DNA from: Basidiobolus meristosporus CBS 931.73
Taxonomy: Eukaryota; Fungi; Basidiobolomycota
DNA: 64,000 nt
Assembly: GCA_002104905.1 (NCBI GenBank)
Contig: MCFE01000010.1
Span: 1 to 64,000 of the forward strand
Reading direction: 5' to 3'
Shown: positions 15,696 through 56,283 of the stretch, in pieces
Numbering within the stretch: the first letter of the stretch is position 1
Layout of the letters: the number at the start of each line of letters is the position of its first letter
Program-made: the position numbers and the translations under genes
Notes under the pieces: generated by a model
Seen by the model: the letters and a program-made list of their open reading frames with translations, nothing else
What the model was told of the DNA's origin: nothing
Database searches by the model: none

Positions 15696-17177
15696 ATGTG
15701 TATCTTGAATAACAGATTATTCAGAGCATCTACCATAGCCTTTATAGCGGTAGGTCTTCTCTGTCTGGTAATCATTACCCCTATCGTTCAACACTATAAG
15801 GATCACCATCACGGTAATGATCACAATGAAGCAGCCTCTGGAGCATTGAAACAGCACGGTATTATCAACACTAGCGCTAACAAAAGCTCAACCGCAAAAA
15901 CGACAAGCCATTCACACACATCAACAACTTCCTCAGCCTCTCCCTCGCCTACACTCTCCAAATGGGTAGATCCCGACACTCCACAGCAGTTCAGAACTAA
16001 GATGGCCGGTGGTCAGAACTTCACCTTGGTGTTCTCCGATGAGTTCAACACCCCGGGACGTAAATTCGCTGAGGGCGAAGATCCCAAGTGGACTGCCGTG
16101 GATCTCTGGTATTGGTCAACTGGAAACATGGAATGGTTGAGCCCAGATGCTGTGACCACCTTTGATGGAAGCATGAAGATCCAAATGACCAAGCAAGAAA
16201 TCAACGGCCATCAATACAGAAGTGGTATGGTTCAGAGTTGGAACAAGTTCTGCTTCACTGGTGGTATTATCGAGGTGAATGTCTCGCTTCCTGGCAGAGG
16301 CGATATTCCAGGATTCTGGCCAGCTGTGTGGACTATGGGTAACTTGGGAAGAGCCGGATATGGGGCCACCACCGATGGCACCTGGCCATATACCTATGAT
16401 ACATGTGACAGTGCCGTGGGTGTGAACCAAAGTCTGCCGTATCCTTTGTCCAGACAACCAGGTCAGAGGCTAAACAAGTGTGTCTGTCCCGGTGAAGATC
16501 ATCCCAACCCAGGAACCGGTCGTGGAGCCCCGGAGATTGATGTCTTCGAGGCAGCCGGTGTTCTTAACAAGAACGGCGTTGTGTCACTCTCTGATCAGAT
16601 CGCTCCCTTCGACTACAAGTACAAAGCAAACGAAGAATTTATGTATCTGTATGGTAAAGAGACCACACATAACGGTTATTTGGGAGGCATTTGCCAGCAG
16701 TGCGTTTCTGCTGTCAACCCTGTCCCTGCGGATGCTTACGAAGGCAAAGCATTCCAAACCTACTCGTTCGAATATGTACCTGGACCTGATGGTTACATCA
16801 TCTGGAGAATCAATGGCCAAGATATCTGGAGACTGGACGCTGCAGCAATTGGACCTGATGCACGCTCGGAGGTTGCTCAAAGACTTATCAGTGCTGAGCC
16901 AATGTACATCATCATGAACTTCGGTATGTCCCATTCTTGGGGCTGGTTCGAATTGGACAAGGTTCCATTCCCAAGCACCATGTGGATTGATTACATTCGT
17001 GTTTATCAACGTCCTGATAAGATCAGCGTTACTTGCGATCCCCCAGGTTATCCCACCACCCAGTATATCAAAGATCACATAAATGCGTATAACGATACAT
17101 CACTTAGGTTCTGGAAAGACGCTGTCTATGAATTCCCGAAGTATAATCTCGATGGCCATTGTCCTGATGTTAAATAA
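15696..17177 (+). CDS. KRE6/SKN1-like GH16 beta-glucan synthesis-associated protein, copy 1
   Basis: N-terminal TM anchor, Ser/Thr stalk, then LVFSDEF, SGMVQSWNKFCFTGG, WPAVWTMGNLGRAGY, GRGAPEIDVFEA (ExDxxE catalytic motif), EPMYIIMN, IDYIRVYQ. Confidence 0.92.
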   Translation: MCILNNRLFRASTIAFIAVGLLCLVIITPIVQHYKDHHHGNDHNEAASGALKQHGIINTSANKSSTAKTTSHSHTSTTSSASPSPTLSKWVDPDTPQQFRTKMAGGQNFTLVFSDEFNTPGRKFAEGEDPKWTAVDLWYWSTGNMEWLSPDAVTTFDGSMKIQMTKQEINGHQYRSGMVQSWNKFCFTGGIIEVNVSLPGRGDIPGFWPAVWTMGNLGRAGYGATTDGTWPYTYDTCDSAVGVNQSLPYPLSRQPGQRLNKCVCPGEDHPNPGTGRGAPEIDVFEAAGVLNKNGVVSLSDQIAPFDYKYKANEEFMYLYGKETTHNGYLGGICQQCVSAVNPVPADAYEGKAFQTYSFEYVPGPDGYIIWRINGQDIWRLDAAAIGPDARSEVAQRLISAEPMYIIMNFGMSHSWGWFELDKVPFPSTMWIDYIRVYQRPDKISVTCDPPGYPTTQYIKDHINAYNDTSLRFWKDAVYEFPKYNLDGHCPDVK

Positions 17178-19962: not shown

Positions 19963-21486
19963 ATGGGTTTTGCACAGAATCGTTTATTCAGGACATCTGC
20001 CATAGTCTTTGTTGTGGTAGGCCTTCTCTGTCTGGTGATCATTACCCCTATTGTTCAACATAATAAGGGTAAGCACCACAATGGTAATAACTATGATGAA
20101 GCTGCCTCAATGGAGCTTAAAAAGCATAGTACGGCTAGTTCCAGCCACTCATTGACATCCTCGGCTACATCTAAATCTGTATCTACCACTAAATCCTCAT
20201 CCACTACTACCACTACCTCCACTACAACTTCTTCAGCCTCTCCTTCGCCTACACTCTCCAAATGGGTAGATCCCGACACTCCACAGCAGTTCAGAACTAA
20301 GATGGCCGGTGGTCAGAACTTCACCTTGGTGTTCTCCGATGAGTTCAACACCCCGGGACGTAAATTCGCTGAGGGCGAAGATCCCAAGTGGACTGCCGTG
20401 GATCTCTGGTACTGGCCAACTGGCAACCTGGAATGGTTGAGCCCAGATGCTGTGACCACCTCTGATGGAAGCATGAAGATCCAAATGACTCAACAAGAAA
20501 TCAATGGTAGACAGTACAGAAGTGGTATGGTTCAGAGTTGGAACAAGTTCTGCTTCACTGGTGGTATTATCGAGGTGAATGTCTCGCTTCCTGGCAGAGG
20601 CGATATTCCAGGATTCTGGCCAGCTGTGTGGACTATGGGTAACTTGGGAAGAGCCGGATATGGGGCCACCACCGATGGCACCTGGCCATATACCTATGAT
20701 ACATGTGACAGTGCCGTGGGTGTGAACCAAAGCTTGCCATATCCCTTATCTCAACAGCCAGGTCAGAAGCTGAACAAGTGTGTCTGTCCCGGTGAAGATC
20801 ATCCCAACCCAGGAACCGGTCGTGGAGCCCCGGAGATTGATGTCTTCGAGGCAGCCGGTGTTCTTAACAAGAACGGCGTTGTGTCACTCTCTGATCAGAT
20901 CGCTCCCTTCGACTACAAGTACAAAGCAAACGAAGAATTTATGTATCTGTATGGTAAAGAGACCACGCATAACGGTTATTTGGGAGGCATTTACCAGCAG
21001 TGCGTTTCTGCTGTCAACCCTGTCCCTGCGGATGCTTACGAAGGCAAAGCATTCCAAACCTACTCGTTCGAATATGTACCTGGACCTGATGGTTACATCA
21101 TCTGGAGAATCAATGGCCAAGATATCTGGAGACTGGACGCTGCAGCAATTGGACCTGATGCACGCTCGGAGGTTGCTCAAAGACTTATCAGTGCTGAGCC
21201 AATGTACATCATCATGAACTTCGGTATGTCTCATTCTTGGGGCTGGTTCGAATTGGACAAGGTTCCATTCCCAAGCACCATGTGGATTGATTACATTCGT
21301 GTTTATCAACGCCCTGATAAGATCAGCGTTACTTGCGATCCCCCAGGTTATCCCACCACCCAATATATCAAGGATCATATGAATGCTTACAACAACACAG
21401 CATTCAGATTCTGGAAGGATGCTGGTTACGAATACCCCAAGTATAATTCTGATGGTCGTTGCCCTGCTACAGCCAACGCATTATAG
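19963..21486 (+). CDS. KRE6/SKN1-like GH16 protein, copy 2
   Basis: Same motifs as copy 1 with EIDVFE intact. Longer Ser/Thr stalk. Aligns to copy 1 at a constant 4300-nt offset over the catalytic domain. Confidence 0.92.
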   Translation: MGFAQNRLFRTSAIVFVVVGLLCLVIITPIVQHNKGKHHNGNNYDEAASMELKKHSTASSSHSLTSSATSKSVSTTKSSSTTTTTSTTTSSASPSPTLSKWVDPDTPQQFRTKMAGGQNFTLVFSDEFNTPGRKFAEGEDPKWTAVDLWYWPTGNLEWLSPDAVTTSDGSMKIQMTQQEINGRQYRSGMVQSWNKFCFTGGIIEVNVSLPGRGDIPGFWPAVWTMGNLGRAGYGATTDGTWPYTYDTCDSAVGVNQSLPYPLSQQPGQKLNKCVCPGEDHPNPGTGRGAPEIDVFEAAGVLNKNGVVSLSDQIAPFDYKYKANEEFMYLYGKETTHNGYLGGIYQQCVSAVNPVPADAYEGKAFQTYSFEYVPGPDGYIIWRINGQDIWRLDAAAIGPDARSEVAQRLISAEPMYIIMNFGMSHSWGWFELDKVPFPSTMWIDYIRVYQRPDKISVTCDPPGYPTTQYIKDHMNAYNNTAFRFWKDAGYEYPKYNSDGRCPATANAL

Positions 21487-22991
21487 GGATTCTCTTTCGC
21501 CACATTGTAAACATATCACCAATCTATTTATACGCTCATCTATATCTCCTTGAACACTCCATGTATCCTTAATCGAGGCTCTATTGACTAAGTCATAACA
21601 TTGAATAAAATTGGATGAATCACGCGAAGCCGTATTCATCACCCAGAAAATCTTTTCCTCTTGACATTAGCCAATCAAGAATGTTGTGATAGCAATATGC
21701 TATTTGCAACATTGTAACGGAGAGTGTTTTGAATCAAACATTCCGATACATCATTTAATTACTCCAGAATGAAGGGATTCCTGGAGAGAGCGGGTGGGGT
21801 GGTGTTTTAGCTAACAGAGAACAAATGCTCGAAACTAGCTTTAGTTATCAAAAGTTGAATTGCAAGCCATGTAGCTGAGAAACTATAGCCAAAAGGTAGT
21901 AGAAAAAAATAATTAATGGAATACTATCGATTTAACTGCATGATTTGATCACCGATTAATCGATTCCAGGCACCACTAAGCTCAGATCATCGTTGTATTC
22001 ATCGAATTGATATTTATCGTACATACTAACCGTTTGCGGTGCATCGCGTGAAGTGTGCCCACACTTGTCTATATCTGGTCGGAGGATCTGTAGAGGACGA
22101 TAGTTTATTGTATCACTAGCACTGACAGTGTTGGAATATGTCAAGGGCATTGAAACTTTATCCTGTTTACATACCCGTATGGTAAGGCGAAAATCTCACA
22201 AACACAGTGGATGTGCCTCGACTATAGTCATCTTCCCATAAAGCAAGAGTAGATAATGACAATTGAGGAGACACCGAAACAATTCATTCTCCTAGTGGCA
22301 TATCAGAGTAAGCAATGTCAAACATGAACACCCTTGGCTCCTACCCGCAGTGTCAACAGTCTACTAGACAAGTCTGACATTTTGGATGGTCCTGTGATGT
22401 GACTTAAAATAGGCAGCCAATCAATGGATGACAATGACAAGCCATGTGTTTATACTATCAATTTATGGCCAAACATCAAGTTGTTAGAGCAGAGATCATT
22501 TGGTCGTGATAGACCTGTAAAAATACGGTAGAACATCCCCAAGAAATCGCGTCAGTTTTGGTACTAATCTAGCCTGGACAAAGGATTTCCCAAGACTGGC
22601 AAACGCAAAAATGCTGGGAGCAAGTCCTGTCAATTCAGGAAAATATTTGGAAGTGGGGATCTATCCTTATTAGCGGAGACCGTCCTTGGTTCTCGGAAAA
22701 GGTGAACTGGACTTGTCATTGCGATATGCGTACTCACGGACAATACCTTACCAGACGCTTCGTCTATATATATAATTGGCAACCCATCTAAACCAATAAC
22801 ACTCTTGTCCAGAGATAGTAGATAAACCCGGCGATCAGGCTTATGGTAAACAATTGGCTAGTTGTCATTTCGACCTTTGTCGCTTTGAGACAAGTATGGC
22901 TTTTCGTACAAAACTGACAAAACCTATAAAAGCCTCGGTTGACGCACCTACGGTTCCACAATCGACACCTTTCATTTTCAGACATCCTATT

Positions 22992-24455
22992 ATGGGTATA
23001 GCACATAATCGGCTTTTCAGGACATCTGCCATAGCTTTTGTTGTGGTAGGTATTCTATGCCTAGTGATTATCACTCCAATTGTCCATCACCACAAAAAAC
23101 ACGAGTATCATCGTAACAATTATAACGAGGCCCTGGCTCCTTTAAACCAAACCAACTCGAACACAGCCATCGAAAACCCCTCACCCTTGATTACCACTGC
23201 TACCGCTGCCTCTGTAGCCACCCCTACACACATCTCAAAATGGATCGATTCTGACACCCCACAGGAGGTCAGGAACAAGGTAGCTGGCGGTCAAAACTTC
23301 ACCTTGGTGTTCTCCGATGAGTTCAACACCCCGGGACGTAAATTCGCTGAGGGCGAAGATCCCAAGTGGACTGCCGTGGATCTCTGGTATTGGTCAACTG
23401 GAAACATGGAATGGTTGAGCCCAGATGCTGTGACCACCTCTGATGGAAGCATGAAGATCCAAATGACCAAGCAAGAAATCAACGGCCATCAATACAGAAG
23501 TGGCATGGTTCAGAGTTGGAACAAGTTCTGCTTCACTGGTGGTATTATCGAGGTGAATGTCTCGCTTCCTGGCAGAGGTGATATTCCAGGATTCTGGCCA
23601 GCTGTGTGGACTATGGGTAACTTGGGAAGAGCCGGATATGGGGCCACCACCGATGGCACCTGGCCATATACCTATGATACATGTGACAGTGCCGTGGGGG
23701 CCAACCAAAGTCTGCCGTATCCTTTGTCCAGACAGCCAGGTCAGAGGCTAAACAAGTGTGTCTGTCCCGGTGAAGATCATCCCAACCCAGGAACCGGTCG
23801 TGGTGCCCCTGAGATTGATGTGTTTGAAGCGGCTGGTATTGACAACAAGAACGGGGTCGTAACACTATCCGACCAAGTCGCTCCTTTCGACTTTGATTAC
23901 ACTGCTAATGCAGAATACATCTCTATCTATGGTAAAGATACAACCAGAAATTCTTATACAGGAGGCGTATATCAGCAATGCGTTTCCGCTGTCAATACGG
24001 TTCCCCTGGACGCTTATGAAGGCAAAGCATTCCAAACCTACTCGTTCGAATATGTGCCTGGGCCTGAGGGATATATTATCTGGAGAATCAACGATCAAGA
24101 TATCTGGAGACTGGATGCGGCAGCAATTGGGCCAGATGCGCGTTCCGAGGTTGCCCAAAGACTTATCAGTGCTGAGCCTATGTCTATTATCATGAACTTG
24201 GGTATGTCCTCAAGCTTCGGATGGGTAGACTTGGAGCAGCTACCATTCCCAAGCACCATGTGGATTGATTATGTTCGTGTTTACCAACTGCCAGACAAGA
24301 TCAGCGTAACCTGTGATCCCCCAGGCTATCCCACCACCCAGTATATCAAGGATCATATGAACGCTTACAATAACACAGCATTCAGATACTGGAAGGATGC
24401 CGGATACGAGTTCCCCAAGTATAACGTTGATGGCAGCTGCCCTAGCTCTATCTAA
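22992..24455 (+). CDS. KRE6/SKN1-like GH16 protein, copy 3
   Basis: ATG at 22992 gives MGIAHNRLFRTSAIAF, homologous to the starts of copies 1 and 2 (the track's upstream TTG start is rejected). A probable 5'UTR intron ends at ttttcag (22981). EIDVFE intact. Confidence 0.92.
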   Translation: MGIAHNRLFRTSAIAFVVVGILCLVIITPIVHHHKKHEYHRNNYNEALAPLNQTNSNTAIENPSPLITTATAASVATPTHISKWIDSDTPQEVRNKVAGGQNFTLVFSDEFNTPGRKFAEGEDPKWTAVDLWYWSTGNMEWLSPDAVTTSDGSMKIQMTKQEINGHQYRSGMVQSWNKFCFTGGIIEVNVSLPGRGDIPGFWPAVWTMGNLGRAGYGATTDGTWPYTYDTCDSAVGANQSLPYPLSRQPGQRLNKCVCPGEDHPNPGTGRGAPEIDVFEAAGIDNKNGVVTLSDQVAPFDFDYTANAEYISIYGKDTTRNSYTGGVYQQCVSAVNTVPLDAYEGKAFQTYSFEYVPGPEGYIIWRINDQDIWRLDAAAIGPDARSEVAQRLISAEPMSIIMNLGMSSSFGWVDLEQLPFPSTMWIDYVRVYQLPDKISVTCDPPGYPTTQYIKDHMNAYNNTAFRYWKDAGYEFPKYNVDGSCPSSI

Positions 24456-27263: not shown

Positions 27264-29113
27264 TTATTTGGTTTTTTCCCTTTCGAGTGGATACTCAGTG
27301 ATCACTTCAACCGAATTAATTGGTGGGAAGGGGTTCTGCTTGCTGAGTACGACGAGCTTGCGCTGGTGGTTTAAGTATCCTTTGACGTAGCCCTGTACGT
27401 GTGTGTGGAGCCAAGTTAGATTATTAGTCGCGTTACTGAGACGATCAACTTACCTGGTCAATTAGGGAGATTAAAATACACTCGGCATCACCTATATCCA
27501 AATCCTCATCATCGCTGGCCACGGACATTGCTGTCAACACATCCTCGTATGACAAGGTGGGCGGTGATTTGGGGGATGGGTTGTACGTCAACAGAAAACT
27601 AGGGGCAATGGCGATGGGATTAAGTGACTGCTCATTGAAGAACCATTTCTCGACGTCTACCTACACTTTTCTTATCAATTGACGATAGAGAATGATGGCA
27701 CAGCGTTCCTTCAGGATCATGTAGTTTCCTGTGCTCAGGAACCAATCAAGCTGGGCATCCAAGGAGCGCTCGAAGCTTCGAATGTCCCCTTTACCAATTG
27801 CTTGGATGATCCCACTCAAGCGATTTACTAGCCCATATTTCTCCAACAACTCTCGAGAGGGCGGCCTGCCACGGATGATTCTTGTGATGGTCAAGTACAA
27901 GAAAATCAACCTTGGGGGAGGGGGTGGTTGGTCACTATCATGACGAAAGTCGTCGTATTAATTGGGCACATACCGCCGATTCTTGCGCATCTCATCGGGG
28001 CAATGTCGGAATGCGAAATCCAGCTCAGTCTCTGCCTGCATCAAATGGCTTAGGTAAGGACGAAAACAACCACTCCATCGTCTATTGAGCTCACCTTTTT
28101 TATCAAATGTTGATAGAGATACAGTCTTCCAACGTAATACCGGTAGGTGACTTGCTGTGAGATTGGGAAATTCTCCACGCTGAGCTTCGCCTTTTGGATG
28201 TTGTTGATGAAAGTTTGGCACAATCTAATTGTATCCAGCTGGTGAAAGATGTCGTACGTGTTAGCATGTCTATCTTCGAGAGTCAGAGCACGCGGCACCT
28301 ACATTGAAGTAAACTTTGAACGCCAAATTCGTGACAAAATAGATGGCTGGTTTTTTGGATTCTTCGAACGGTGCTCTGCAGGGAAAGGGGATGATCAGAG
28401 TTGGCCGTGAGAGTACATATAAACATCCGCCACCACACAAACCTATCACTAATAATCATGTTGAAGGTCCTCGATAGAATACGTGCTGCGTCGGTGGCTT
28501 TCTTGTTTTTGCTTCGAACACGAGTTTGCTTATCTGCCTGGAGTCCTCGTGTTAAAAACCGCACGTATGGAGTAAATTAGGAGTGCTATATTTCAGTACC
28601 TGCAACGCAAATTCCACCAAATAGCTTGATAGCTTTTTAACCATTGGAACAAGCCACCCAGCATCGCCTGCGTTAAATGCGGGAATGAATTGTCTAGTGT
28701 GTCGGAATTGATTAATCCAAGCTCTTGGACGATCGAAAAAAAACCAAACTATATTACGCAAATACGTCGGCAAAAAGATCGTAGAGATGCGTCAAGTTAG
28801 TAGGGTCCACCTCCTTTATAAATGTAAGATACGCTGCAGTAAGATCGTCATAGGGCCTTTCTGTAATATTCTTCCTACATAACGCTTGGACATTATTCAC
28901 CTAATATAATACAGCGACTAGGTAAATCATGGATCTGTTTGCAGTAATCTTCGTAGAGGTCTGGAAATAACTAACCGATTGCAACTCTTTTTTTAGTGTA
29001 TCTGTATATGAGTTGACATCAAAGTCGAAGTAATATGCAAGAAGATCACCATCTCTGGCACCTCTTGCCTGGGATACCTGCTGTATCGTTTCCAACACTG
29101 TAGGGCAAGACAT
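27264..29113 (-). CDS. PCI-domain protein (PCID2/CSN12/Thp1 family), multi-exon
   Basis: Spliced reading gives ...[18 protein letters not shown]|LDTIRLCQ...[19 protein letters not shown]...[11 protein letters not shown]|[23 protein letters not shown]. All introns inspected are GT-AG. Start codon tentative. Confidence 0.85.
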
Positions 29114-47234: not shown

Positions 47235-50200
47235 ATGATGTTCGAGTCCTTTCTTCGGCCTCGGTTACCGCTGCTATTTTTTGGATTATTCTTGTTTTTT
47301 GTATGTACTCAAGCTCAAGGGATCGAGTCATTGGATGAAATAGAACAAGAATGCATACACCCGAGCAAGCAGGCTGATCCCTGCCAGTTTGTTCGTATGT
47401 ATTGTGGAAGTGAGGCTGGCCTTATCAATTATCTAGAACTTCGTTATTGCACAGTCTCCCCACAAAACGCTATCTGGTTTTTCGCATTGATGTTGTTCCT
47501 GACAATAGCCTACTTCTATGCATTGTTCAGAGTTAGTGATGTACACTTGACCACTGCTCTGCAGAGTATCTCCGACTACCTCGGACTAAGCAGCGAAATT
47601 GCTGGTCTGACTCTGCTTTCGTTTGGCAACGGTGCCCCCGACTTGTTCACAGCGTTTGCCGGAGTCAGCTCTGGTGATTATGAATTGATTTTTGGTTCAA
47701 CAATAGGGAGTGCTATGTTTGTGCTCAATGTTGTTCTGGGAAGTATCATCATAGCCTCATATTTCCGACACAAGAACGAGGTGCTATCCTTCCTTGAACA
47801 AAACCCCCCGGAGATTCCTCGCGCCGGCTCCTCTTTTGAAGGAGAAGTAGAGCAGCCTCGGCCAGCGAGTAGTTCAGAGTCTTTCGTAAGACTGAGGAGA
47901 AAGCTACAGTCCATTACCAGAGCCCTCCGTCTAGACGCTTGTAATGAGCGTTCTTCATCCTACTGTGTCATACAGTTCAGAGGTAACTCTGTGGATAGGT
48001 TTTCGCATCTCCGCAATATGTCCATCTATACCATCGCAGTGTTCATGCTGTTGGCTATATTTAACGACGGCACAGTTCATTGGTACGACCCCGTAATACT
48101 GTTGGTATATTATGTTTTCTTTTTGGCTTTCTTCATTGGTAGACATTTCTACCTCGAACGAACAGCGAGAAAGAAAAAAGAGGCTAGCTTAAAGTTGAAC
48201 CAGATTACATCTCCTTCGAGTGCACTTTTCCGCGGCGCCTCCTTTGACTCAGTCCGTACTTTCGACAACAACCTAATGGTGTCAGATTCCGCACGGCTCT
48301 TTCTCGACGCAAAGCCAGTGACTCCCGGGATTTCCGAGGGAAGTTTAAAGCAGCCTGTATTCGACATACCACAGCTTATTGTAACACCAGCAGATATTCC
48401 CGAAGACAGGTATATTTTGGTTTTCGGCCCTGAGCAACATTATCTGTATTCTAACTTTCCTTTAGTGATGATTCCCTGAGTAATACACACAAGCGACATC
48501 ATCTGTTCAGAGCCAATAAGCCTAATCCGATAATTACCACCTGTTTTACTGAATGCTCCACCGCTCATGAGGGAGCAATCCCCCCACTCCCTACCATAGT
48601 GATTAGCGCGGAAGAAGAAAGCCTGTTAGATGTGTCTGACAAAGATCAAGAAACCTATGTGGAGGACGAGCAATTCAAACTTGACTTTTGTCATTTGTTT
48701 GATTTGTTGAAGCTACACCTATATCACGATAGTGAGATAATGTATTCCTTAAAGGCACGGTTCCGCTTCACCAAACCAACCACCATATTTCAGTGGATCA
48801 AATTGATTGCTGAAACATCTACTGGGATCTTCTGGATATTCATGATACCAATACGCTGCTTGATCTTCCTATCGATGCCACCTTTTCTATCTGATATGAT
48901 CACTGAGGTGGATGATGATATCCGAGAGGAGGATGAGGATCACCTTGAAGAGATCGCTATGAATTCCGAGAACCCAGAGGAGTATGTTGAAGATGCTGTT
49001 AGCACCAGCATCATACGCTACAGATGTAGCTGCGATATTACCGACAGTGAGAAACAAACAGCAGCAATCGGATCAGAGAGAGCCAAAAGCTCGGATTATC
49101 CACATTCACCATCTCCCAGTAGACTGTTGACTGTACCTAGAATTGATGTAAATAGCGATATACCGCCCGCCTTCAATCTTTATAACTCGAAGCAACGCAA
49201 CTCCATAAAATGCGCCCGTCCTGTCTCCCCCCAAAAAGCATTCATTCCGCCCGAAATGCCAAGTATACAAACTGGAGGTCTGTACACACCTACACCTGCA
49301 CAAAGAGTAGTATCCAACCACAAGTGTGCGTTCGTACCCGACTCGGCCTGTAGCCCTGAATCACGCCATTTGGATTACGGAACCATGTCAGAGAATGTCA
49401 GAAAAGCGCCTTGGTGGTGGCCTCTACCGCGAAAGGCGATGATTCGATTCATATATCATTTGACGCATGTTCCGGTCCATCGATTTCTCAAATATCGTGT
49501 CCTCATGGCGGTCTACCCATTTGTCGCAAGTCTACTGATCATCTTCTTAGCGGGATTCGACATTGAAGGACTGGGCATCCTTGCCGTATTAGTTGTTGCA
49601 GTAGTCTTGATGATCTCCGGCCTTCTTGTAACGCACTCTATTGTGCCAGTTGCCGCGGATTTTGGTCGAGGTTTCGCCGAATATCTAGATGCCAAATCGC
49701 AATTGAGCCCGTTGTCAGGTGGAATGTTCTCACCTACATCTGCTGCAGTAAACTCACCTTCGAATCAGTATTCAAGCGGAGAGGCAGTGTCGCTCTCCAC
49801 AGACGAGAAGAATATCGCCCGGTACCTCAAGTTCCTCCTTATGGCCTACTGCCGCGGAGGATACTCCGAGTGCAAACCGTGCCATATTTCATTTCACACC
49901 ATCAAGGTTGCATCCATCCTGTATCTGTACGAGCTAGTATGCGCATTCATAACGTTCCTCATGTCCATACTGTGGATCTATCTGGTATCGAACGAGATCG
50001 TTGCACTGCTCGCTTCCCTTGGTACCATACTGTCCCTTTCCAAAGCGATTCTTGGACTGACTGTTCTTGCCTGGGGAAACTCGCTTGGCGATCTCTTTGC
50101 TGATGTTGCCATGGCCAGGGCAGGCTTCTTCCGAGTTGCATTCACCGCTGTTTGGGCGGGGCCAATTCAGAATCTGCTCTTGACCTTGGGCATCACCCTT

Positions 50201-50452
50201 CTGATAGGATGTTTCCAGCATAAGCCAGTGGGGGCCGGTCTGAATGCAGCCAGTATACCCCTACCACCGATATCTGCCACAATCTGGTTGGGATTCGCAT
50301 TTTTGCTGTTCAGTGTAGTGATCCTGAGCGGAGCGCTGCTGGGACTCTACTACAAGTTCCGATTACCCCTGTCCTTGGGCATCCTGTTGATCGCCAATTT
50401 CGCCGTTTACCTGATCACCGCCATATTCATGGAGTGGAGAACAGAAGGCTAA
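47235..50452 (+). CDS. Cation/Ca2+ exchanger (CCX/NCLX family), 2 exons (intron 48410-48465), ~1053 aa
   Basis: Alpha-1 repeat GLTLLSFGNGAPDLFTA and alpha-2 repeat GLTVLAWGNSLGDLFADV; N-terminal signal and Cys-containing luminal segment (GLINYLELRYC). The intron joins the two track ORFs in frame. Confidence 0.9.
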
Positions 50453-50842: not shown

Positions 50843-51523
50843 TTAAAACTCAGTAGTGTGTTGCGAATAGGCCTGACCCGAGTAGTAGTTGGGCGGGTAC
50901 GTTGCGTGTTGCAAGTGCTGGTTCTGCTCCTGGGTGCCTTGGAATAGCACGCTCGATGCCTCTCCCCCTTCATCCTCCTTGTAACCGCCGTTGGTTTTGT
51001 CGACCTTGATTGTCTACAGGTGGGAAGGTGAGTGACATAGATACTTTGGAAACCTGTGGGAGCAACCGACTTCGCCTACCTCCCGATACTTCCCCAGGTA
51101 TATCTTCAAGACCTCCGCGTAGTTCTCGAACCCTAGCGACTGCATAGCCCACAGGATATCTTCGCCGTTGATGGTCTTTCTCTTTTCCTGTATGCAACGA
51201 TCGCTCGCTGTGACGAAACAGAGTTAAGGTGAACTAACGCAGTTGAGTGCTCGATCTCTCCCCCTCCTACGCAAGAGGAGAGTAAGGGTGAAGGTGAGGG
51301 TGAGGGTGAGGGGTTGGCTAGTGGGTACAAAAGGATATTCGCTGGTGATGAAGGAGATGAACTCCGACACGCACTCCTGTATGGTCTCCTTTGCCTCCTT
51401 CGCGATCTTCGCATTATCCGGCAGGCTACGTTTCATGATGCGGGCGACGTTGGCGATGGGTAAGAGACGGTCCTGCTCCCGGATGTCGTCGTGTTCATCA
51501 AGCTGGTTTTCCCCTGACATCAT
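50843..51523 (-). CDS. HAP3: CCAAT-binding factor subunit NF-YB/Hap3, 3 coding exons (51523-51339, 51209-51080, 51013-50843)
   Basis: [21 protein letters not shown]...[24 protein letters not shown]|[43 protein letters not shown]. The histone fold is restored only by removing an AT-AC intron. Confidence 0.95.
51210..51338 (-). other. U12-type (minor spliceosome) AT-AC intron, 129 nt
   Basis: 5' end ATATCCTTTT; branch site CACCTTAAC (CCTTAAC at 51229-51223) ~13 nt from the 3' end; ends ...CGTCAC. Splits the Glu codon of ITSE/ASD exactly (GA|A). Confidence 0.95.
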
Positions 51524-51633
51524 AAAGGTTTTCTTTTCTGAATGGGGGGGGGGAGGAGTTGGTTCAGGGTAAGTAGGCGCCCTCGAGAGGACGGGAAATC
51601 ACGTCGCTAACAAATGAAACCATGCTTACCCAG

Positions 51634-52500
51634 TGGACGTATCGATATGCACCTCTGTCGGTATAAGTGACGCGCTTAACGAACCGCCCGACCTGAATCC
51701 CGCTGTGGGTGATATAGGAGAGGCGTCAGCTGGGAAGTGACACGAGGGAGGTCACCTGATTGGTCGGTCGATATCAATCTTCCTTCCCTGATCCCAATTG
51801 GGGTTTTTTTTGAACCCGATTGTTTGATGTGGTCTAGCGAGGTTTCAACCGCGGTATCAGCTCGGAATACATTCGCTCGACCGTTCCTAAAAATATTCCC
51901 TAGGGTGAGCGGCCTTGGTCCCGCGGAGGGAAACCCGATGTTGACAACACCCCAGAGGGCCATGCTACGAACCCACTCCACTGTAGCCTATTCGAACCAC
52001 GAGGGGCACGTTGGTCGCATCCAATGCAGCTCAGAATCCCCTGAACCTGATTCAACGTGGAGCCATTCGCGACTGGTTCTAAACCTAGACTCTGGTCAAC
52101 CGTTCAATCACCGTGACGAGGGGACGCCGATCGCCGTGTCCAAGATGCATCATCACACCCATCAACAGAACGAAGGTTTGGGCCGTACTGGCCGGTCCCC
52201 ATCCACAGTTCGGTGGTCTCATGGGTCTGAGACCAGGCCCCCGAATTGGATCTGGATGGCTCCAATTCGCCAGATGGTCAAACATCACCTGCTGAGGTAG
52301 CCAAGGGTCCTTGGATTCCCATTGGCGACTCCTGGCATATGAGCACTGCCTCGCAAAATTGCATAACCCAGCTCACCAAGTCCATTCTGCATGATATCCC
52401 GGGGGTCGAGGCGGCTCTGTAGCATACAACTTTCACGCCCAGTAACTCCGCCAAGCCCCTATTGGTATGGGGACGTGACGGTGTACTACCCACACTTACC
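51634..52500. ncRNA. Candidate structured non-coding RNA or very long structured 5' leader, identity and strand unresolved
   Basis: No protein-like ORF. Several nested helices, including a 22-bp interrupted stem at 52199-52259. Flanked by intron-like signals on both strands. See findings. Confidence 0.35.
51756..51765 (-). promoter_or_regulatory. CCAAT box upstream of HAP3
   Basis: gaCCAATcag on the minus strand, ~235 nt upstream of the HAP3 ATG. Matches the NF-Y preferred context; function is inferred. Confidence 0.4.
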
Positions 52501-52769: not shown

Positions 52770-55700
52770 CTACAATTGGCAGGTACCAGGTGCCGGAGGT
52801 TTCGGTGTGGTTTGAGGTTGAGGTTGGGCTCGGTTGTGGATCATGTGGGATTTCACCAGATCACCCGACGCCAATGCAGAACAAAGCGACAGCTCTCCGG
52901 CCAGGACTGCGGCGCAGATGATGCGAGCTAGCTGCTGGGAATTGGCACCAGGCTCGGTGGGATGTGGTCCACGAACCCCCAAGATATCGAGACACGCCGA
53001 CTGAGGGGGTAATTGGGTACCTCCTCCGATCGTACCCACTTCAATTGATGGCATGGTGCAGGTCACCAACAGATCTTGTCCGTCGTTCACCGCCTCCATC
53101 AAAGTGATACATGTAGAACTTTCGACATTCTGGGCTGGGTCTTGTCCAGTGGCGAGGTAAATGGCGGTTAGAATGTTGGCGGCATGAGCGTTGAAGCCAC
53201 CAATTGAACCAGCCATGGCAGAACCAACCAAATTTTTGGAGATATTCAGCTCAACCAAGGCGCTGACCGAGGTCTTGAGGACCTTCTTGACCACCTCTCC
53301 AGGAATCACCGACTCGGCGACAACCGATTTGCCACGACCTTCGATCCAGTTGATGGCAGCTGGCTTCTTGTCAGTGCAGTAGTTGCCACTAAGAGAGATG
53401 ATCAGCATTTCGGGGAATTGCTCCCTCAATGCGACTAGCGCCTTCTCAACGCCCTTGGAAATCATGTTCATTCCCATGGCGTCTCCGGTAGCAGTGACAA
53501 ATCGAATGTATACCAAGCGTCCTGCCAATGTGACCTTGAGCTTCTTGAGTCTTGCGAAACGGCTGGTGGAGTTGAAGGTGGAGACAATGAAGTCGAACCC
53601 TTCTCCCTCGACCCATTTCTTGCAGGCGTTGGCCCGGGTGATATTGGGGAATTCAAGCACCGGTCCTCTGGTCATACCGTCGTTGGTGAGCACGGTAATG
53701 GCCCCTCCGCCAGCATTCATCGCTTTGCATCCACGTGCAGTGGAGGCAACTAAACAACCCTCAGTAGTGGCCATAGGGATATGATAGAGTTTACCATCGA
53801 TATTAAGAGGGCCGGCAATACCCACAGGGATAGGCATATAGCCGATGACGTTTTCACAGCATTGGCCCATCACTTTAGTGTAGTCATAATGCTCAACTGG
53901 GAGCGCACTGTTCTCGAGCGACTTGGTGACTGATGCACGGGAGATCAGGGAGCGGCGAATCTTTACGGCGCGGACATGGTCCTTCAACACCTTCTCAAGA
54001 GCATAAGGAGCGATCTTGCCATTGTTAACGAGGGACAGAACTTCGGAGTCGGTCAACCCGTAGGGTCCTGCCTCCGAGTTCAGCACAGTTAGGCATTCAT
54101 CCACAGGACGAATAACATCACTAGTGGGGATTTCCATCTTTACTGGGGCCTCAACAGGCTTGGAGAGAGGGGCAGCAACTGGCACTGGAGCCTCAGGCTT
54201 GGTCAACGCCTTACTAGCGTTTGCGGTGGACTCACCCTCGTGTTGTTCAGTTTTAGAGAGGTTGTAAAGGTAAGCGTTGAACACCAACGATGCAACCAAA
54301 CAGGCGAAGGTCAGAATATAAACGATGGTATCCTTCATGTACAAGTCGATCAAATGTGCGATGACATACACGGACTCCATCAACTCCCTGGTGACAGACT
54401 CGGAGTTGACCAGGCGGAATACCAGTGGAGCAGAGATATCAACGACAAGTGGATGTTCAGCTTGATGAGTAGACAGAAGACTCAAACCAGACTGAATTGC
54501 TGGCTCACTGAAATCAAGGGAAACGGAGTCGCCAATTGATTCGCTGTTCAAGGGGCTGTATATGTTGAACATATGAATGGCCAAGAATCCGAAGATCATC
54601 AATAGCTTGATACGCGAGATGGTGGGGTTCTCCACCTTCTCGATAGAATCAGCACCAGTGGTATCCTTCAAGGCCTCCATGGTGATTTTCTTGATATAAG
54701 CAGGGCTTGTGTCGTTACGTTCCTTCTTACCGCCGTTCCTTCTCTCCTCACGGATGCGGATCAACTCCAACTTGATGGTTAACACGGCAGTATAGAAAGT
54801 GAAGAGAAAGACGCAATCATAGAATAATATCAAAGCGGCCAACGCCGAGAATTCCTTGAGTCCGTGGACGTTGGAGAATGCGCCACATGCCAATAAGGCA
54901 ATTTCCAGGAAGTAGCTCTTGAGAATGGTGCCACTGACCTTGCTGACACCCGACACCACCTTGTCTTGGACAGAGAGTGGGGTGATAACTCCGTTTTGGC
55001 TTCTAGCGATCGTTTCAACAGTGGGTGAAGACTTGGCGAACAAAACTGCCTTGGTCAGAGTGTATGGCTTCTCGAAGCCAACAGTAATAACCAAGAAAGG
55101 AATTGCCTCGCTTAACATGACGATATTGATTGGGATATTCAAAGCGCGCACGGTGATCAGGGCCAGGATGAACGCGGAGATGCTGGACATCAAAACGGCT
55201 ACCGCAAGAGTGATTTTGGATCCAATTTCACGCATATTGAAGAAGAGAACGGCAATTGTTCCATGCATTAAGATATACGCGATCAAGACCAAGGTGACCT
55301 CGGCACTGTTGGCCTGGTCTACAAGCTCCTTGATCTTGAAGCAAGCATTTACGAATAGGGTCACCAACCAGTGTCCAGTTGTTTTGTCTGAGGCAAGAGT
55401 AGGTGGCACGATATTGGCAACTTGGGCGAGTGAGGCCTTTTCCTCCCACTGAGTGATAAGATTCTTCCCTCTGTCGTCGTTACTGGCAAAGATATAAGAG
55501 AGAACGTAGGTAGAGGAGTCGGTGTTTGTGGAGATAAGATCGTAACTGAGACAAGTAGAATCGTCCAGCTTGAAGCACAGATCCTTGTGGTAGGTATAAG
55601 ACCCCAAGACATCCGAAACAGTCATGTTTTTGGTAAGGTATTCGTCCAACTGAGAGATAGAAGGGAAAACGCCTTGGTTGGGTTCCTCTTCGGAAGCTCC

Positions 55701-55991
55701 GGTAAAGACATGCTTCGAGAGGGTTATTTGCACCTGCTTCATATGGTAACGAGGGGTATTTTCGTATTTCTGAACATCATCAAGCTGGCTAAGGGGGATA
55801 AATTGGTTGTCTAAGCGGACCAAAGTTTCGTTGCTTTGCTTTGGAAGCTGCTCGGCAAAGAGATTGGAGTATCTGATGTTATGCCAAATACCGTAGTACG
55901 CGCAAGAGAACACTATGAAGCATAGGATGATGACTTCTATGGGATTCTTTGCCGACCGCAAGGTAGCAGCTTTGACTGGCGAGACAAACAT
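52770..55991 (-). CDS. HMG1: Class I HMG-CoA reductase with sterol-sensing domain, ~1073 aa
   Basis: SSD ([16 protein letters not shown]), [54 protein letters not shown]. First ATG at 55991; the track's extension to 56219 is probably UTR or intron. Confidence 0.96.
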
Positions 55992-56283
55992 TCTGTGACC
56001 TCTTCCTATGTGATACCAAAGAACAAAATGAAAAAAGTAGAAGTGTGGGGAAGAGACACTGGGAAGGAAAACCAACAGAAAAGAGCCAGGGAGCCAAGAA
56101 ACGCAAGCACTACTTGATTGTTTTATGGAAAATCGGTGTATCAGGTAAGAATAGATTTGGAAATAGTCATTGCTCTGTGGCCGTGAATTAAAACAAGCGA
56201 TATTATCCCAAAACCCCAAAGATTACGAAACGATTGGATAAGGAAATCCGGTAAGATGAGCTCGTGTTCCACACCAGGACCGG

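What the first reader, a model, noticed from the sequence alone, without database searches (positions are those of the whole stretch)
51210..51338. Textbook AT-AC minor-spliceosome intron inside the fungal HAP3/NF-YB histone fold
Seen: the minus-strand intron begins ATATCCTTTT, has CCTTAAC ~13 nt before a terminal AC, and its removal is the only way found to restore the conserved FITSE-ASDRC[10 protein letters not shown] sequence. No GT-AG alternative keeps the frame. Established: the U12 spliceosome was lost in Dikarya but kept in some early-diverging fungi, and AT-AC introns are the rarer U12 subtype. Inference: this organism has a working minor spliceosome, and CCAAT-complex assembly could be rate-limited by minor splicing. 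Unspliced RNA reads on to a stop at 51224 and encodes a 99-aa truncated Hap3 lacking half the histone fold. Gene predictors are likely to mis-model this gene.
Basis: partly seen in the sequence, partly recalled or inferred. Interest (0 to 1): 0.75.

Follow-up and report, generated by a model that had tools for sequence, protein, structure and literature searches.

The report
Minor-spliceosome AT-AC intron in Basidiobolus NF-YB
The 129-base stretch is very probably a real intron of the rare minor-spliceosome (U12, AT-AC) type in the CCAAT-factor gene Hap3/NF-YB of the fungus Basidiobolus meristosporus, but this fungus is already known to be rich in such introns and its public gene model already removes this one correctly.

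Summary
Observation confirmed. On the minus strand, 51338..51210 begins ATATCCTTT, carries CCTTAAC 13 nt before a terminal AC, and splits the Glu codon (GA|A) of FITS-E-ASDRC. The two flanking exons match the NF-YB histone fold with exactly one residue missing between them.

The window is Basidiobolus meristosporus CBS 931.73. Two published surveys count 237 and 249 minor introns in this species and report U11, U12 and U6atac snRNA genes in its lineage.

It holds for relatives: two Basidiobolus ranarum models, a Dentiscutata model, an Absidia model and a Syncephalis model all read into or stop at the intron.

The same AT-AC intron, with signals kept and interiors randomised, is in the B. meristosporus paralogue, in B. 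ranarum copies, in Dentiscutata (Glomeromycota) and in Halteromyces (Mucorales). Podila, Bifiguratus and a chytrid have a GT-AG intron 2 nt downstream. Two other fungi have none.

The scan had already noted the paralogue's 76-nt intron on other DNA of this genome (s1-197663), plus many other AT-AC introns. Verdict: genuine, a further member of a known kind, low to moderate interest. The rate-limiting idea is untested. Exons were searched one by one and never joined.

The parts
51339..51523 (-). Exon 1 of Hap3/NF-YB: ATG at 51523, 61 codons plus GA of the split Glu codon
   Evidence: translation. Pfam PF00808 E=2.8e-16, profile positions 2-42 of 65. HapC chain 4g91_B residues 2-48. Identical to P0001 residues 1-61.
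51210..51338 (-). U12-type AT-AC intron, 129 nt, lying after the 2nd base of the Glu codon
   Evidence: The public protein P0001 implies exactly this junction.
51330..51338 (-). 5' splice site ATATCCTTT (U12 consensus)
   Evidence: The same 9-mer is found in 7 gene copies from 4 species.
51285..51312 (-). Hexamer microsatellite (CACCCT-like, 4.7 copies) inside the intron; it accounts for part of the extra length compared with the 72-111-nt homologous introns
51223..51230 (-). Branch-site motif ACCTTAAC (core CCTTAAC), 13 nt before the intron end; contains the in-frame TAA (51226-51224) that ends the unspliced 99-aa ORF
51210..51211 (-). Terminal AC of the intron
51080..51209 (-). Exon 2: third base of the Glu codon plus 43 codons, ASDRC...KYRE
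   Evidence: Pfam PF00808 profile positions 44-65 of 65. HapC 4g91_B residues 50-92, E=5.5e-19. Identical to P0001 residues 63-105.
51014..51079 (-). Intron 2, GT-AG, 66 nt (GTAGGC...CTGTAG). The public model uses a donor 9 nt further down (GTCGGT at 51070), which adds VGE.
   Evidence: The paralogue and B. ranarum proteins read KYRE-TIKVDK without VGE.
50843..51013 (-). Exon 3: 56 codons plus the TAA stop; low-complexity C-terminal tail
   Evidence: Identical to P0001 residues 109-164.

Best explanation
Window 51523..50843 (minus strand) is one of at least two Hap3/HapC/NF-YB genes of Basidiobolus meristosporus CBS 931.73. Helix alpha-2 of its histone fold is interrupted, after the second base of the Glu codon in FITS-E-ASDRC, by a 129-nt U12-type intron of the AT-AC subtype.

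Inferred mechanism, from established knowledge of minor splicing: U11 and then U6atac pair with ATATCCTT, U12 pairs with the CCTTAAC branch site, and the branch adenosine about 14 nt from the 3' end directs cleavage after AC. This joins GA to A and gives a full NF-YB fold.

Shown here: the sequence signals, the exact one-residue fit to the fold, the agreement with the deposited protein, and the conservation of the signals in paralogues and in other fungal phyla.

Inferred only: the use of the minor spliceosome itself and the efficiency of splicing.
For: 1. Signals and position.
2. Exon 1 covers PF00808 profile positions 2-42 and exon 2 covers 44-65. They match HapC 4g91_B residues 2-48 and 50-92, so exactly one residue spans the junction. 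Of the four ways to supply that residue, only AT...AC has canonical ends (read).
3. Public protein P0001 (B. meristosporus CBS 931.73, 100% identical) equals exon 1 + E + exon 2 + VGE + exon 3 when checked piece by piece.
4. The same ATATCCTTT...[AT][CT]CTTAAC...AC intron sits at the same codon position in the paralogue L001:1686-1761, B. ranarum L002:1683-1772 and L003:1686-1757, Dentiscutata L008:992-1087 and Halteromyces L010:844-954. L004 shows the 5' end only.
5. Between copies the exons keep 76-100% amino-acid identity at 60-86% nucleotide identity, while intron interiors align no better than shuffled sequence.
6. Literature: 249 (Larue & Roy 2023, PMC10639083) and 237 (Olthof 2024, PMC11347168) minor introns in this species. 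U11, U12 and U6atac genes are reported in zoopagomycote fungi, and a putative divergent U4atac in B. meristosporus.
Against: - No RNA evidence could be examined here. I infer, but did not see, that the public model rests on transcripts.
- The mRNA cannot tell AT...AC from a 1-nt-shifted TA...CA cut, because of the repeated A.
- No minor snRNA lies in this window (Rfam scan), so the machinery is known only from papers.
- The branch motif is ACCTTAAC, 7 of 8 matches to TCCTTAAC.
Confidence: 0.9

Rival explanations
1. The intron is real, but minor splicing of it is slow or regulated. Retention, giving the 99-aa truncated product or nonsense-mediated decay, would then limit Hap3 supply and CCAAT-complex assembly. 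This is the first reader's functional add-on and is compatible with the best explanation.
For: Both B. meristosporus Hap3 paralogues found carry the same U12 intron, so no U12-free copy was seen. An in-frame stop lies inside the intron. Slow minor splicing is described in animals (my own knowledge).
Against: There are no expression or retention data. In the fungus Rhizophagus, Larue & Roy found no link between minor splicing and proliferation (section headings). Conservation of the intron is equally expected under neutral persistence.
Confidence: 0.12
2. The AT-AC intron is removed by the major (U2-dependent) spliceosome, as a few AT-AC introns are in animals.
For: U2-dependent AT-AC introns exist (noted in Olthof 2024).
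Against: Those introns lack the ATATCCTT and TCCTTAAC motifs. Here both are present, correctly spaced, and conserved across four species while the rest of the intron drifts.
Confidence: 0.03
3. A GT/GC-AG alternative is the real junction, for example GC at 51342 with the AG ending at 51208 (135 nt), giving a variant protein.
For: In-frame GT/GC-AG pairs exist.
Against: All of them delete or insert residues in an invariant stretch: S61, E62, A63 and S64 are invariant in 17 proteins. The donors are poor (GCGAAT). The public protein and all orthologues read SEASD.
Confidence: 0.03
4. The gene is decaying and the 99-aa unspliced ORF is all that is made.
For: The ORF 51224..51523 is open.
Against: Exons 2 and 3 downstream of the intron are intact. 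Exon 2 is 100% identical in protein to B. ranarum at 80% nucleotide identity, which indicates purifying selection. Splice signals are intact.
Confidence: 0.02

Closest known systems
Catalogued minor (U12-type) introns of Basidiobolus meristosporus (Larue & Roy 2023, PMC10639083; Olthof et al. 2024, PMC11347168)
   Same: Same genome and same intron class. Both surveys scored annotated introns, and this intron is in the public annotation with the right junction, so it is very likely among their 249 and 237.
   Different: Neither paper's text names NF-YB, and no paper in the library links NFYB or NF-YB with minor introns. I could not open their intron lists.
Classical AT-AC U12-dependent introns of animals and plants (consensus /ATATCCTT ... 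TCCTTAAC, then 10-15 nt, then AC/)
   Same: 5' splice site 9 of 9, branch motif 7 of 8, branch-to-3' spacing within the usual range, terminal AC, and a non-zero intron phase (phase 2).
   Different: None in the sequence. Dependence on U11/U12/U4atac/U6atac is not shown for this intron.
Aspergillus nidulans HapC in the CCAAT-binding complex (PDB 4g91 chain B); NF-YB of animals and plants
   Same: The two exons align to HapC residues 2-48 and 50-92 with E values of 3.6e-20 and 5.5e-19. Invariant fold residues are kept.
   Different: Dikarya such as Aspergillus have no minor spliceosome. The C-terminal tail (exon 3) has no family match.
Minor-to-major intron conversion and intron sliding
   Same: Podila, Bifiguratus and Phlyctochytrium carry a GT-AG intron 2 nt downstream of the AT-AC site, and the mRNA (GA-AG-Cx) is unchanged.
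   Different: Published pipelines compare identical positions only and would score such a slide as a loss (Larue & Roy methods). The direction of change and common descent are not shown here.

Membership tests
U12-type (minor-spliceosome) intron, AT-AC subtype | 5' splice site matching /ATATCCTT | tested here: met
   ATATCCTTT at 51338-51330.
U12-type (minor-spliceosome) intron, AT-AC subtype | Branch-site motif TCCTTAAC roughly 10-20 nt from the 3' splice site, with no need for a polypyrimidine tract | tested here: met
   ACCTTAAC at 51230-51223, with 13 nt to the intron end.
U12-type (minor-spliceosome) intron, AT-AC subtype | Terminal AC, and removal restores the reading frame and the conserved protein | tested here: met
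   AC at 51211-51210. Exon pieces fit PF00808 and HapC with one residue between them. Piecewise identity to P0001.
U12-type (minor-spliceosome) intron, AT-AC subtype | Splice signals conserved in homologous introns while the interior drifts | tested here: met
   Six complete homologous introns plus one 5' end in four species. Interior identity equals the shuffled level.
U12-type (minor-spliceosome) intron, AT-AC subtype | Host genome encodes U11, U12, U4atac and U6atac and the minor-specific proteins | not testable with these tools
   Only this window is available and it holds none. The literature reports U11, U12 and U6atac in zoopagomycote fungi and a putative divergent U4atac in B. meristosporus.
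U12-type (minor-spliceosome) intron, AT-AC subtype | Junction observed in RNA and dependent on the minor spliceosome | not testable with these tools
   No RNA-seq access. The deposited protein model implies the junction.
NF-YB / HAP3 / HapC histone-fold subunit of the CCAAT-binding complex | CBFD_NFYB_HMF histone fold above Pfam's cut-off | tested here: met
   Exon 1 scores 60 bits and exon 2 scores 23.1 bits against a cut-off of 21.4.
NF-YB / HAP3 / HapC histone-fold subunit of the CCAAT-binding complex | Closest solved relatives are NF-YB/HapC rather than NC2-beta, CHRAC or core histones | tested here: met
   NF-YB/HapC chains at E 1e-17 to 1e-21, against CHRAC-14 at 5.6e-5 and NC2-beta at 1.8e-4.
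NF-YB / HAP3 / HapC histone-fold subunit of the CCAAT-binding complex | Forms a dimer with Hap5/NF-YC and binds CCAAT together with Hap2 | not tested
   No partner genes were examined.

The most novel reading that the evidence does not exclude
The intron after the 2nd base of the Glu codon of FITS-E-AS would be an ancient minor intron of NF-YB that predates the split of Basidiobolomycota, Glomeromycota, Mucoromycota and Zoopagomycotina, and perhaps fungi themselves. It would have been turned into a major intron several times: in place (GA|GT...) or by a 2-nt slide (GAAG|GT...CAG|C) that reuses the AG following the old AC as acceptor.

Current conversion-versus-loss pipelines compare identical positions only. 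They would count such slid conversions as losses and so underestimate conversion.
Probability: 0.35. Interest if true: 0.45.

Novelty: new member of a known kind. Interest (0 to 1): 0.3.

Why it matters
For this genome it matters little. The species is the published fungal record-holder for minor introns, and the deposited model already has the junction.

The practical value is for annotation elsewhere. The same intron is mis-modelled in Basidiobolus ranarum, Dentiscutata erythropus, Absidia glauca and Syncephalis plumigaleata, where NF-YB proteins are truncated or carry a spurious 'EYPF...' segment.

The comparative pattern is the more interesting part. One intron site shows a U12 AT-AC state, a U2 GT-AG state and a GT-AG state shifted by 2 nt. 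That makes it a compact test case for how minor introns are converted or lost in fungi.

Tried and rejected
- Rfam scan of the window at gathering thresholds: no match, so no minor snRNA gene here.
- Other RTATCCTT sites in the window. The sites at 16439 and 23717 are coding sequence of tandem SKN1/KRE6 paralogues. The site at 21563 lies after a stop codon. The site at 27375 and the rest have no branch motif. None is a credible second U12 intron.
- GT/GC-AG alternatives were enumerated by frame arithmetic. All were rejected because they damage invariant fold residues.
- Metagenome scan with a 17-protein alignment: of 80 loci, 77 are uninterrupted at the site and 3 lack the motif. Retrieval favours contiguous matches and transcript contigs, so this says nothing about intron states.
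- Triparma (stramenopile) locus: no intron at the site, so uninformative.
- Two cluster look-ups to name the unnamed read-through proteins. The first gave only Syncephalis and Phaeothamnion names. The second gave no organism names.
- Paper searches for NFYB or NF-YB with minor or U12 introns found nothing relevant. The supplements of Olthof 2024 are not held.
- Not done by rule: the three exons were never joined into one typed or scripted protein for a search or a fold. Exons were searched by reference one at a time, and the public protein P0001 was compared piece by piece. No human sequence was fetched or compared, so animal NFYB intron positions remain unchecked.

Full report
**What is in the sequence.** All of the following is on the minus strand.
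- An ORF starts at ATG 51523 and reads MMSGENQ...SEFISFITS.
- After AGC (Ser) come G and A at 51340-51339, then ATATCCTTTTGT from 51338.
- CCTTAAC lies at 51229-51223, followed by 13 nt that end in AC (51211-51210).
- The next bases are A GCG AGC GAT CGT TGC, giving [15 protein letters not shown]...KYRE.
- A second, ordinary GT-AG intron (51079..51014) leads to a 56-codon tail and a stop at 50845-50843.
- Left unspliced, the frame stops at the TAA inside CCTTAAC, giving the 99-aa ORF 51224..51523.

**More than chance?** A composite U12 pattern (RTATCCTT, 30-600 nt, CCTTRAC, 7-18 nt, AC or AG) occurs once on both strands of the window, at this place. Random sequences with the same dinucleotide transitions give 0.26 per window.

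The decisive point is position.
- Exon 1 covers Pfam PF00808 profile positions 2-42 and exon 2 covers 44-65.
- They align to Aspergillus HapC (4g91_B) residues 2-48 and 50-92.
- Exactly one residue must therefore be made across the junction.
- Of the four ways to split one codon there, only GA|AT...AC|A has canonical intron ends.

All of them remove or add residues in a stretch that is invariant in 17 NF-YB proteins.

**Whose gene, and is it already modelled?** The word-index protein search used the unspliced 99-aa ORF, scoring residues 1-61. It returned a 164-aa 'histone-fold-containing protein' of Basidiobolus meristosporus CBS 931.73 at 100% identity (P0001).

Checked piece by piece, P0001 equals exon 1 + E + exon 2 + VGE + exon 3. 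The deposited model thus already uses the 51339^51209 junction. It differs from my reading only at intron 2, where it takes a donor 9 nt further down. The paralogue and the B. ranarum orthologue read KYRE-TIKVDK without VGE, so the upstream donor GTAGGC at 51079 is the better supported. It may also be an alternative donor.

Exons were searched by reference one at a time.

**Is a minor spliceosome plausible here?** Yes, and it is published.
- Larue & Roy 2023 (PMC10639083) report 249 minor introns in B. meristosporus (0.554% of introns), the highest density known in fungi.
- Olthof et al. 2024 (PMC11347168) report 237. They also report U11, U12 and U6atac genes in zoopagomycote fungi and a putative divergent U4atac in this species.
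- The window itself holds no snRNA gene.

Earlier notes of this scan gave the species name and the 'already known to be rich' statement. I verified both. One note (s1-197663) describes a 76-letter AT-AC intron in an NF-YB fold on another piece of the genome. That is the paralogue I fetched independently as L001:1686-1761.

**Comparative evidence.** The same intron, at the same place in the same codon, with ATATCCTTT at the 5' end and [AT][CT]CTTAAC 10-30 nt before AC, is present in:

| Copy | Locus | Length |
|---|---|---|
| B. meristosporus, this window | 51338..51210 | 129 nt |
| B. meristosporus paralogue | L001:1686-1761 | 76 nt |
| B. ranarum | L002:1683-1772 | 90 nt |
| B. ranarum | L003:1686-1757 | 72 nt |
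| B. ranarum | L004 | 5' end only (contig ends) |
| Dentiscutata erythropus (Glomeromycota) | L008:992-1087 | 96 nt |
| Halteromyces radiatus (Mucorales) | L010:844-954 | 111 nt |

In Halteromyces the branch motif lies an unusual 30 nt from the intron end, after a long T run.

Between copies the flanking exons keep 76-100% amino-acid identity at 60-86% nucleotide identity. The intron interiors align no better than shuffled sequence. This is the signature of a functional intron whose only constrained parts are the U12 signals.

**Other states at the site.**
- Podila clonocystis, Bifiguratus adelaidae and the chytrid Phlyctochytrium planicorne have a GT-AG intron 2 nt downstream, after the first base of the Ala codon (GAAG|GT...AG|Cx).
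- The mRNA is the same GA-AG-Cx in both states.
- Two of the three 3' ends read ACAG, as if the AG following an old AC had become the acceptor.
- Tieghemiomyces, Syncephalis pseudoplumigaleata and the stramenopile Triparma have no intron there.

Indirect evidence comes from proteins that read through the site. The set is biased to short models.

| Read-through | Count (of 256) | Meaning |
|---|---|---|
| E-Y-P-[FL] | 31 | Translation of R-TATCC-N-YT, a U12-like 5' site at the same position |
| E-Y-P-other | 17 | R-TATCC read-through |
| E-stop or E-[YCW] | 67 | A GT donor at the same position |
| E-G | 30 | The +2 donor |

- The E-Y-P-[FL] group includes Absidia glauca P0109, Syncephalis plumigaleata P0127 and one sequence labelled Prorocentrum minimum (P0132).
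- The E-stop or E-[YCW] group includes an Ipomoea batatas isoform and plant-like N-termini.

These are peptide inferences without DNA, and mostly without taxon names. They suggest, but do not prove, that the intron position is widely shared among eukaryotes and that the U12 state is old.

**Mechanism.** Shown here are the signals, the fit to the fold, and the conservation. The rest is inferred from the established model of minor splicing. In that model U11 and later U6atac pair with ATATCCTT, and U12 pairs with the branch site. The first step uses the adenosine in CCTTAAC about 14 nt from the 3' end, and the second step cuts after AC.

The only relevant fact is that both Hap3 paralogues found depend on the same kind of intron.

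**Verdict.** This is a genuine U12-type AT-AC intron in a genuine NF-YB gene. It is one more member of a class already catalogued for this species, and it is correctly spliced in the public model. Interest is low to moderate.

The parts worth keeping are two:
- the list of mis-modelled orthologues in other early-diverging fungi;
- the three-state pattern at one intron site, including a recurrent 2-nt offset that standard conversion and loss pipelines would miss (their methods).

No human sequence was fetched, so animal NF-YB genes were not compared.

Noticed in passing
window 51014-51079 (minus strand): The public model P0001 places the intron-2 donor 9 nt downstream (GTCGGT at 51070), inserting VGE after KYRE. 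The paralogue and B. ranarum proteins lack VGE, so the donor GTAGGC at 51079 is better supported, or the two are alternative donors.
   Followed up: partly
L002-L004 (B. ranarum), L008 (Dentiscutata); proteins P0002, P0005, P0111, P0109, P0127: Public NF-YB models in relatives are broken at this intron. P0002 stops at FITSE. P0005 and P0111 read into the intron (FITSEYPF...). Absidia glauca P0109 and Syncephalis plumigaleata P0127 replace AS by a spurious YPF/YPL segment.
   Followed up: yes
L007:988-1182, L009:869-920, L011:770-862: A GT-AG intron lies exactly 2 nt downstream of the AT-AC position in Podila, Bifiguratus and a chytrid, with an identical mRNA. Two of the three end in ACAG, and Podila keeps a TTCTTGAAC motif 8 nt before that AC. 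This may be a relic of a converted U12 intron (intron slide).
   Followed up: partly
window 51285-51312: A hexamer microsatellite (AGGGTG on the plus strand, 4.7 copies) lies inside the intron and is absent from the homologous introns.
   Followed up: yes
window about 16340-16760, 19963-21486 and 23620-24040 (plus strand): A tandem cluster of at least three SKN1/KRE6-type beta-glucan synthesis genes. Pfam PF03935 was checked only for the middle copy (E=7.6e-172). All three share the coding motif LPYPLS, which mimics GTATCCTTT in the first and third copies.
   Followed up: partly
window 52770-56219 (minus strand) and 48599-50452 (plus strand): The neighbours of the Hap3 gene are an apparently uninterrupted 1149-aa HMG-CoA reductase ORF with a sterol-sensing domain and a Na/Ca-exchanger-family ORF.
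   Followed up: partly
window 51530-51640 (minus strand): A possible 5'-UTR intron (GTAAGC...CCATTCAG) just upstream of the start codon. This rests on reading the sequence only.
   Followed up: no
window 51634-52500: Another note of the scan (s1-212705) flags a hairpin-rich 0.9-kb stretch between Hap3 and HMGR. It is the upstream or promoter side of this gene. I did not examine it.
   Followed up: no
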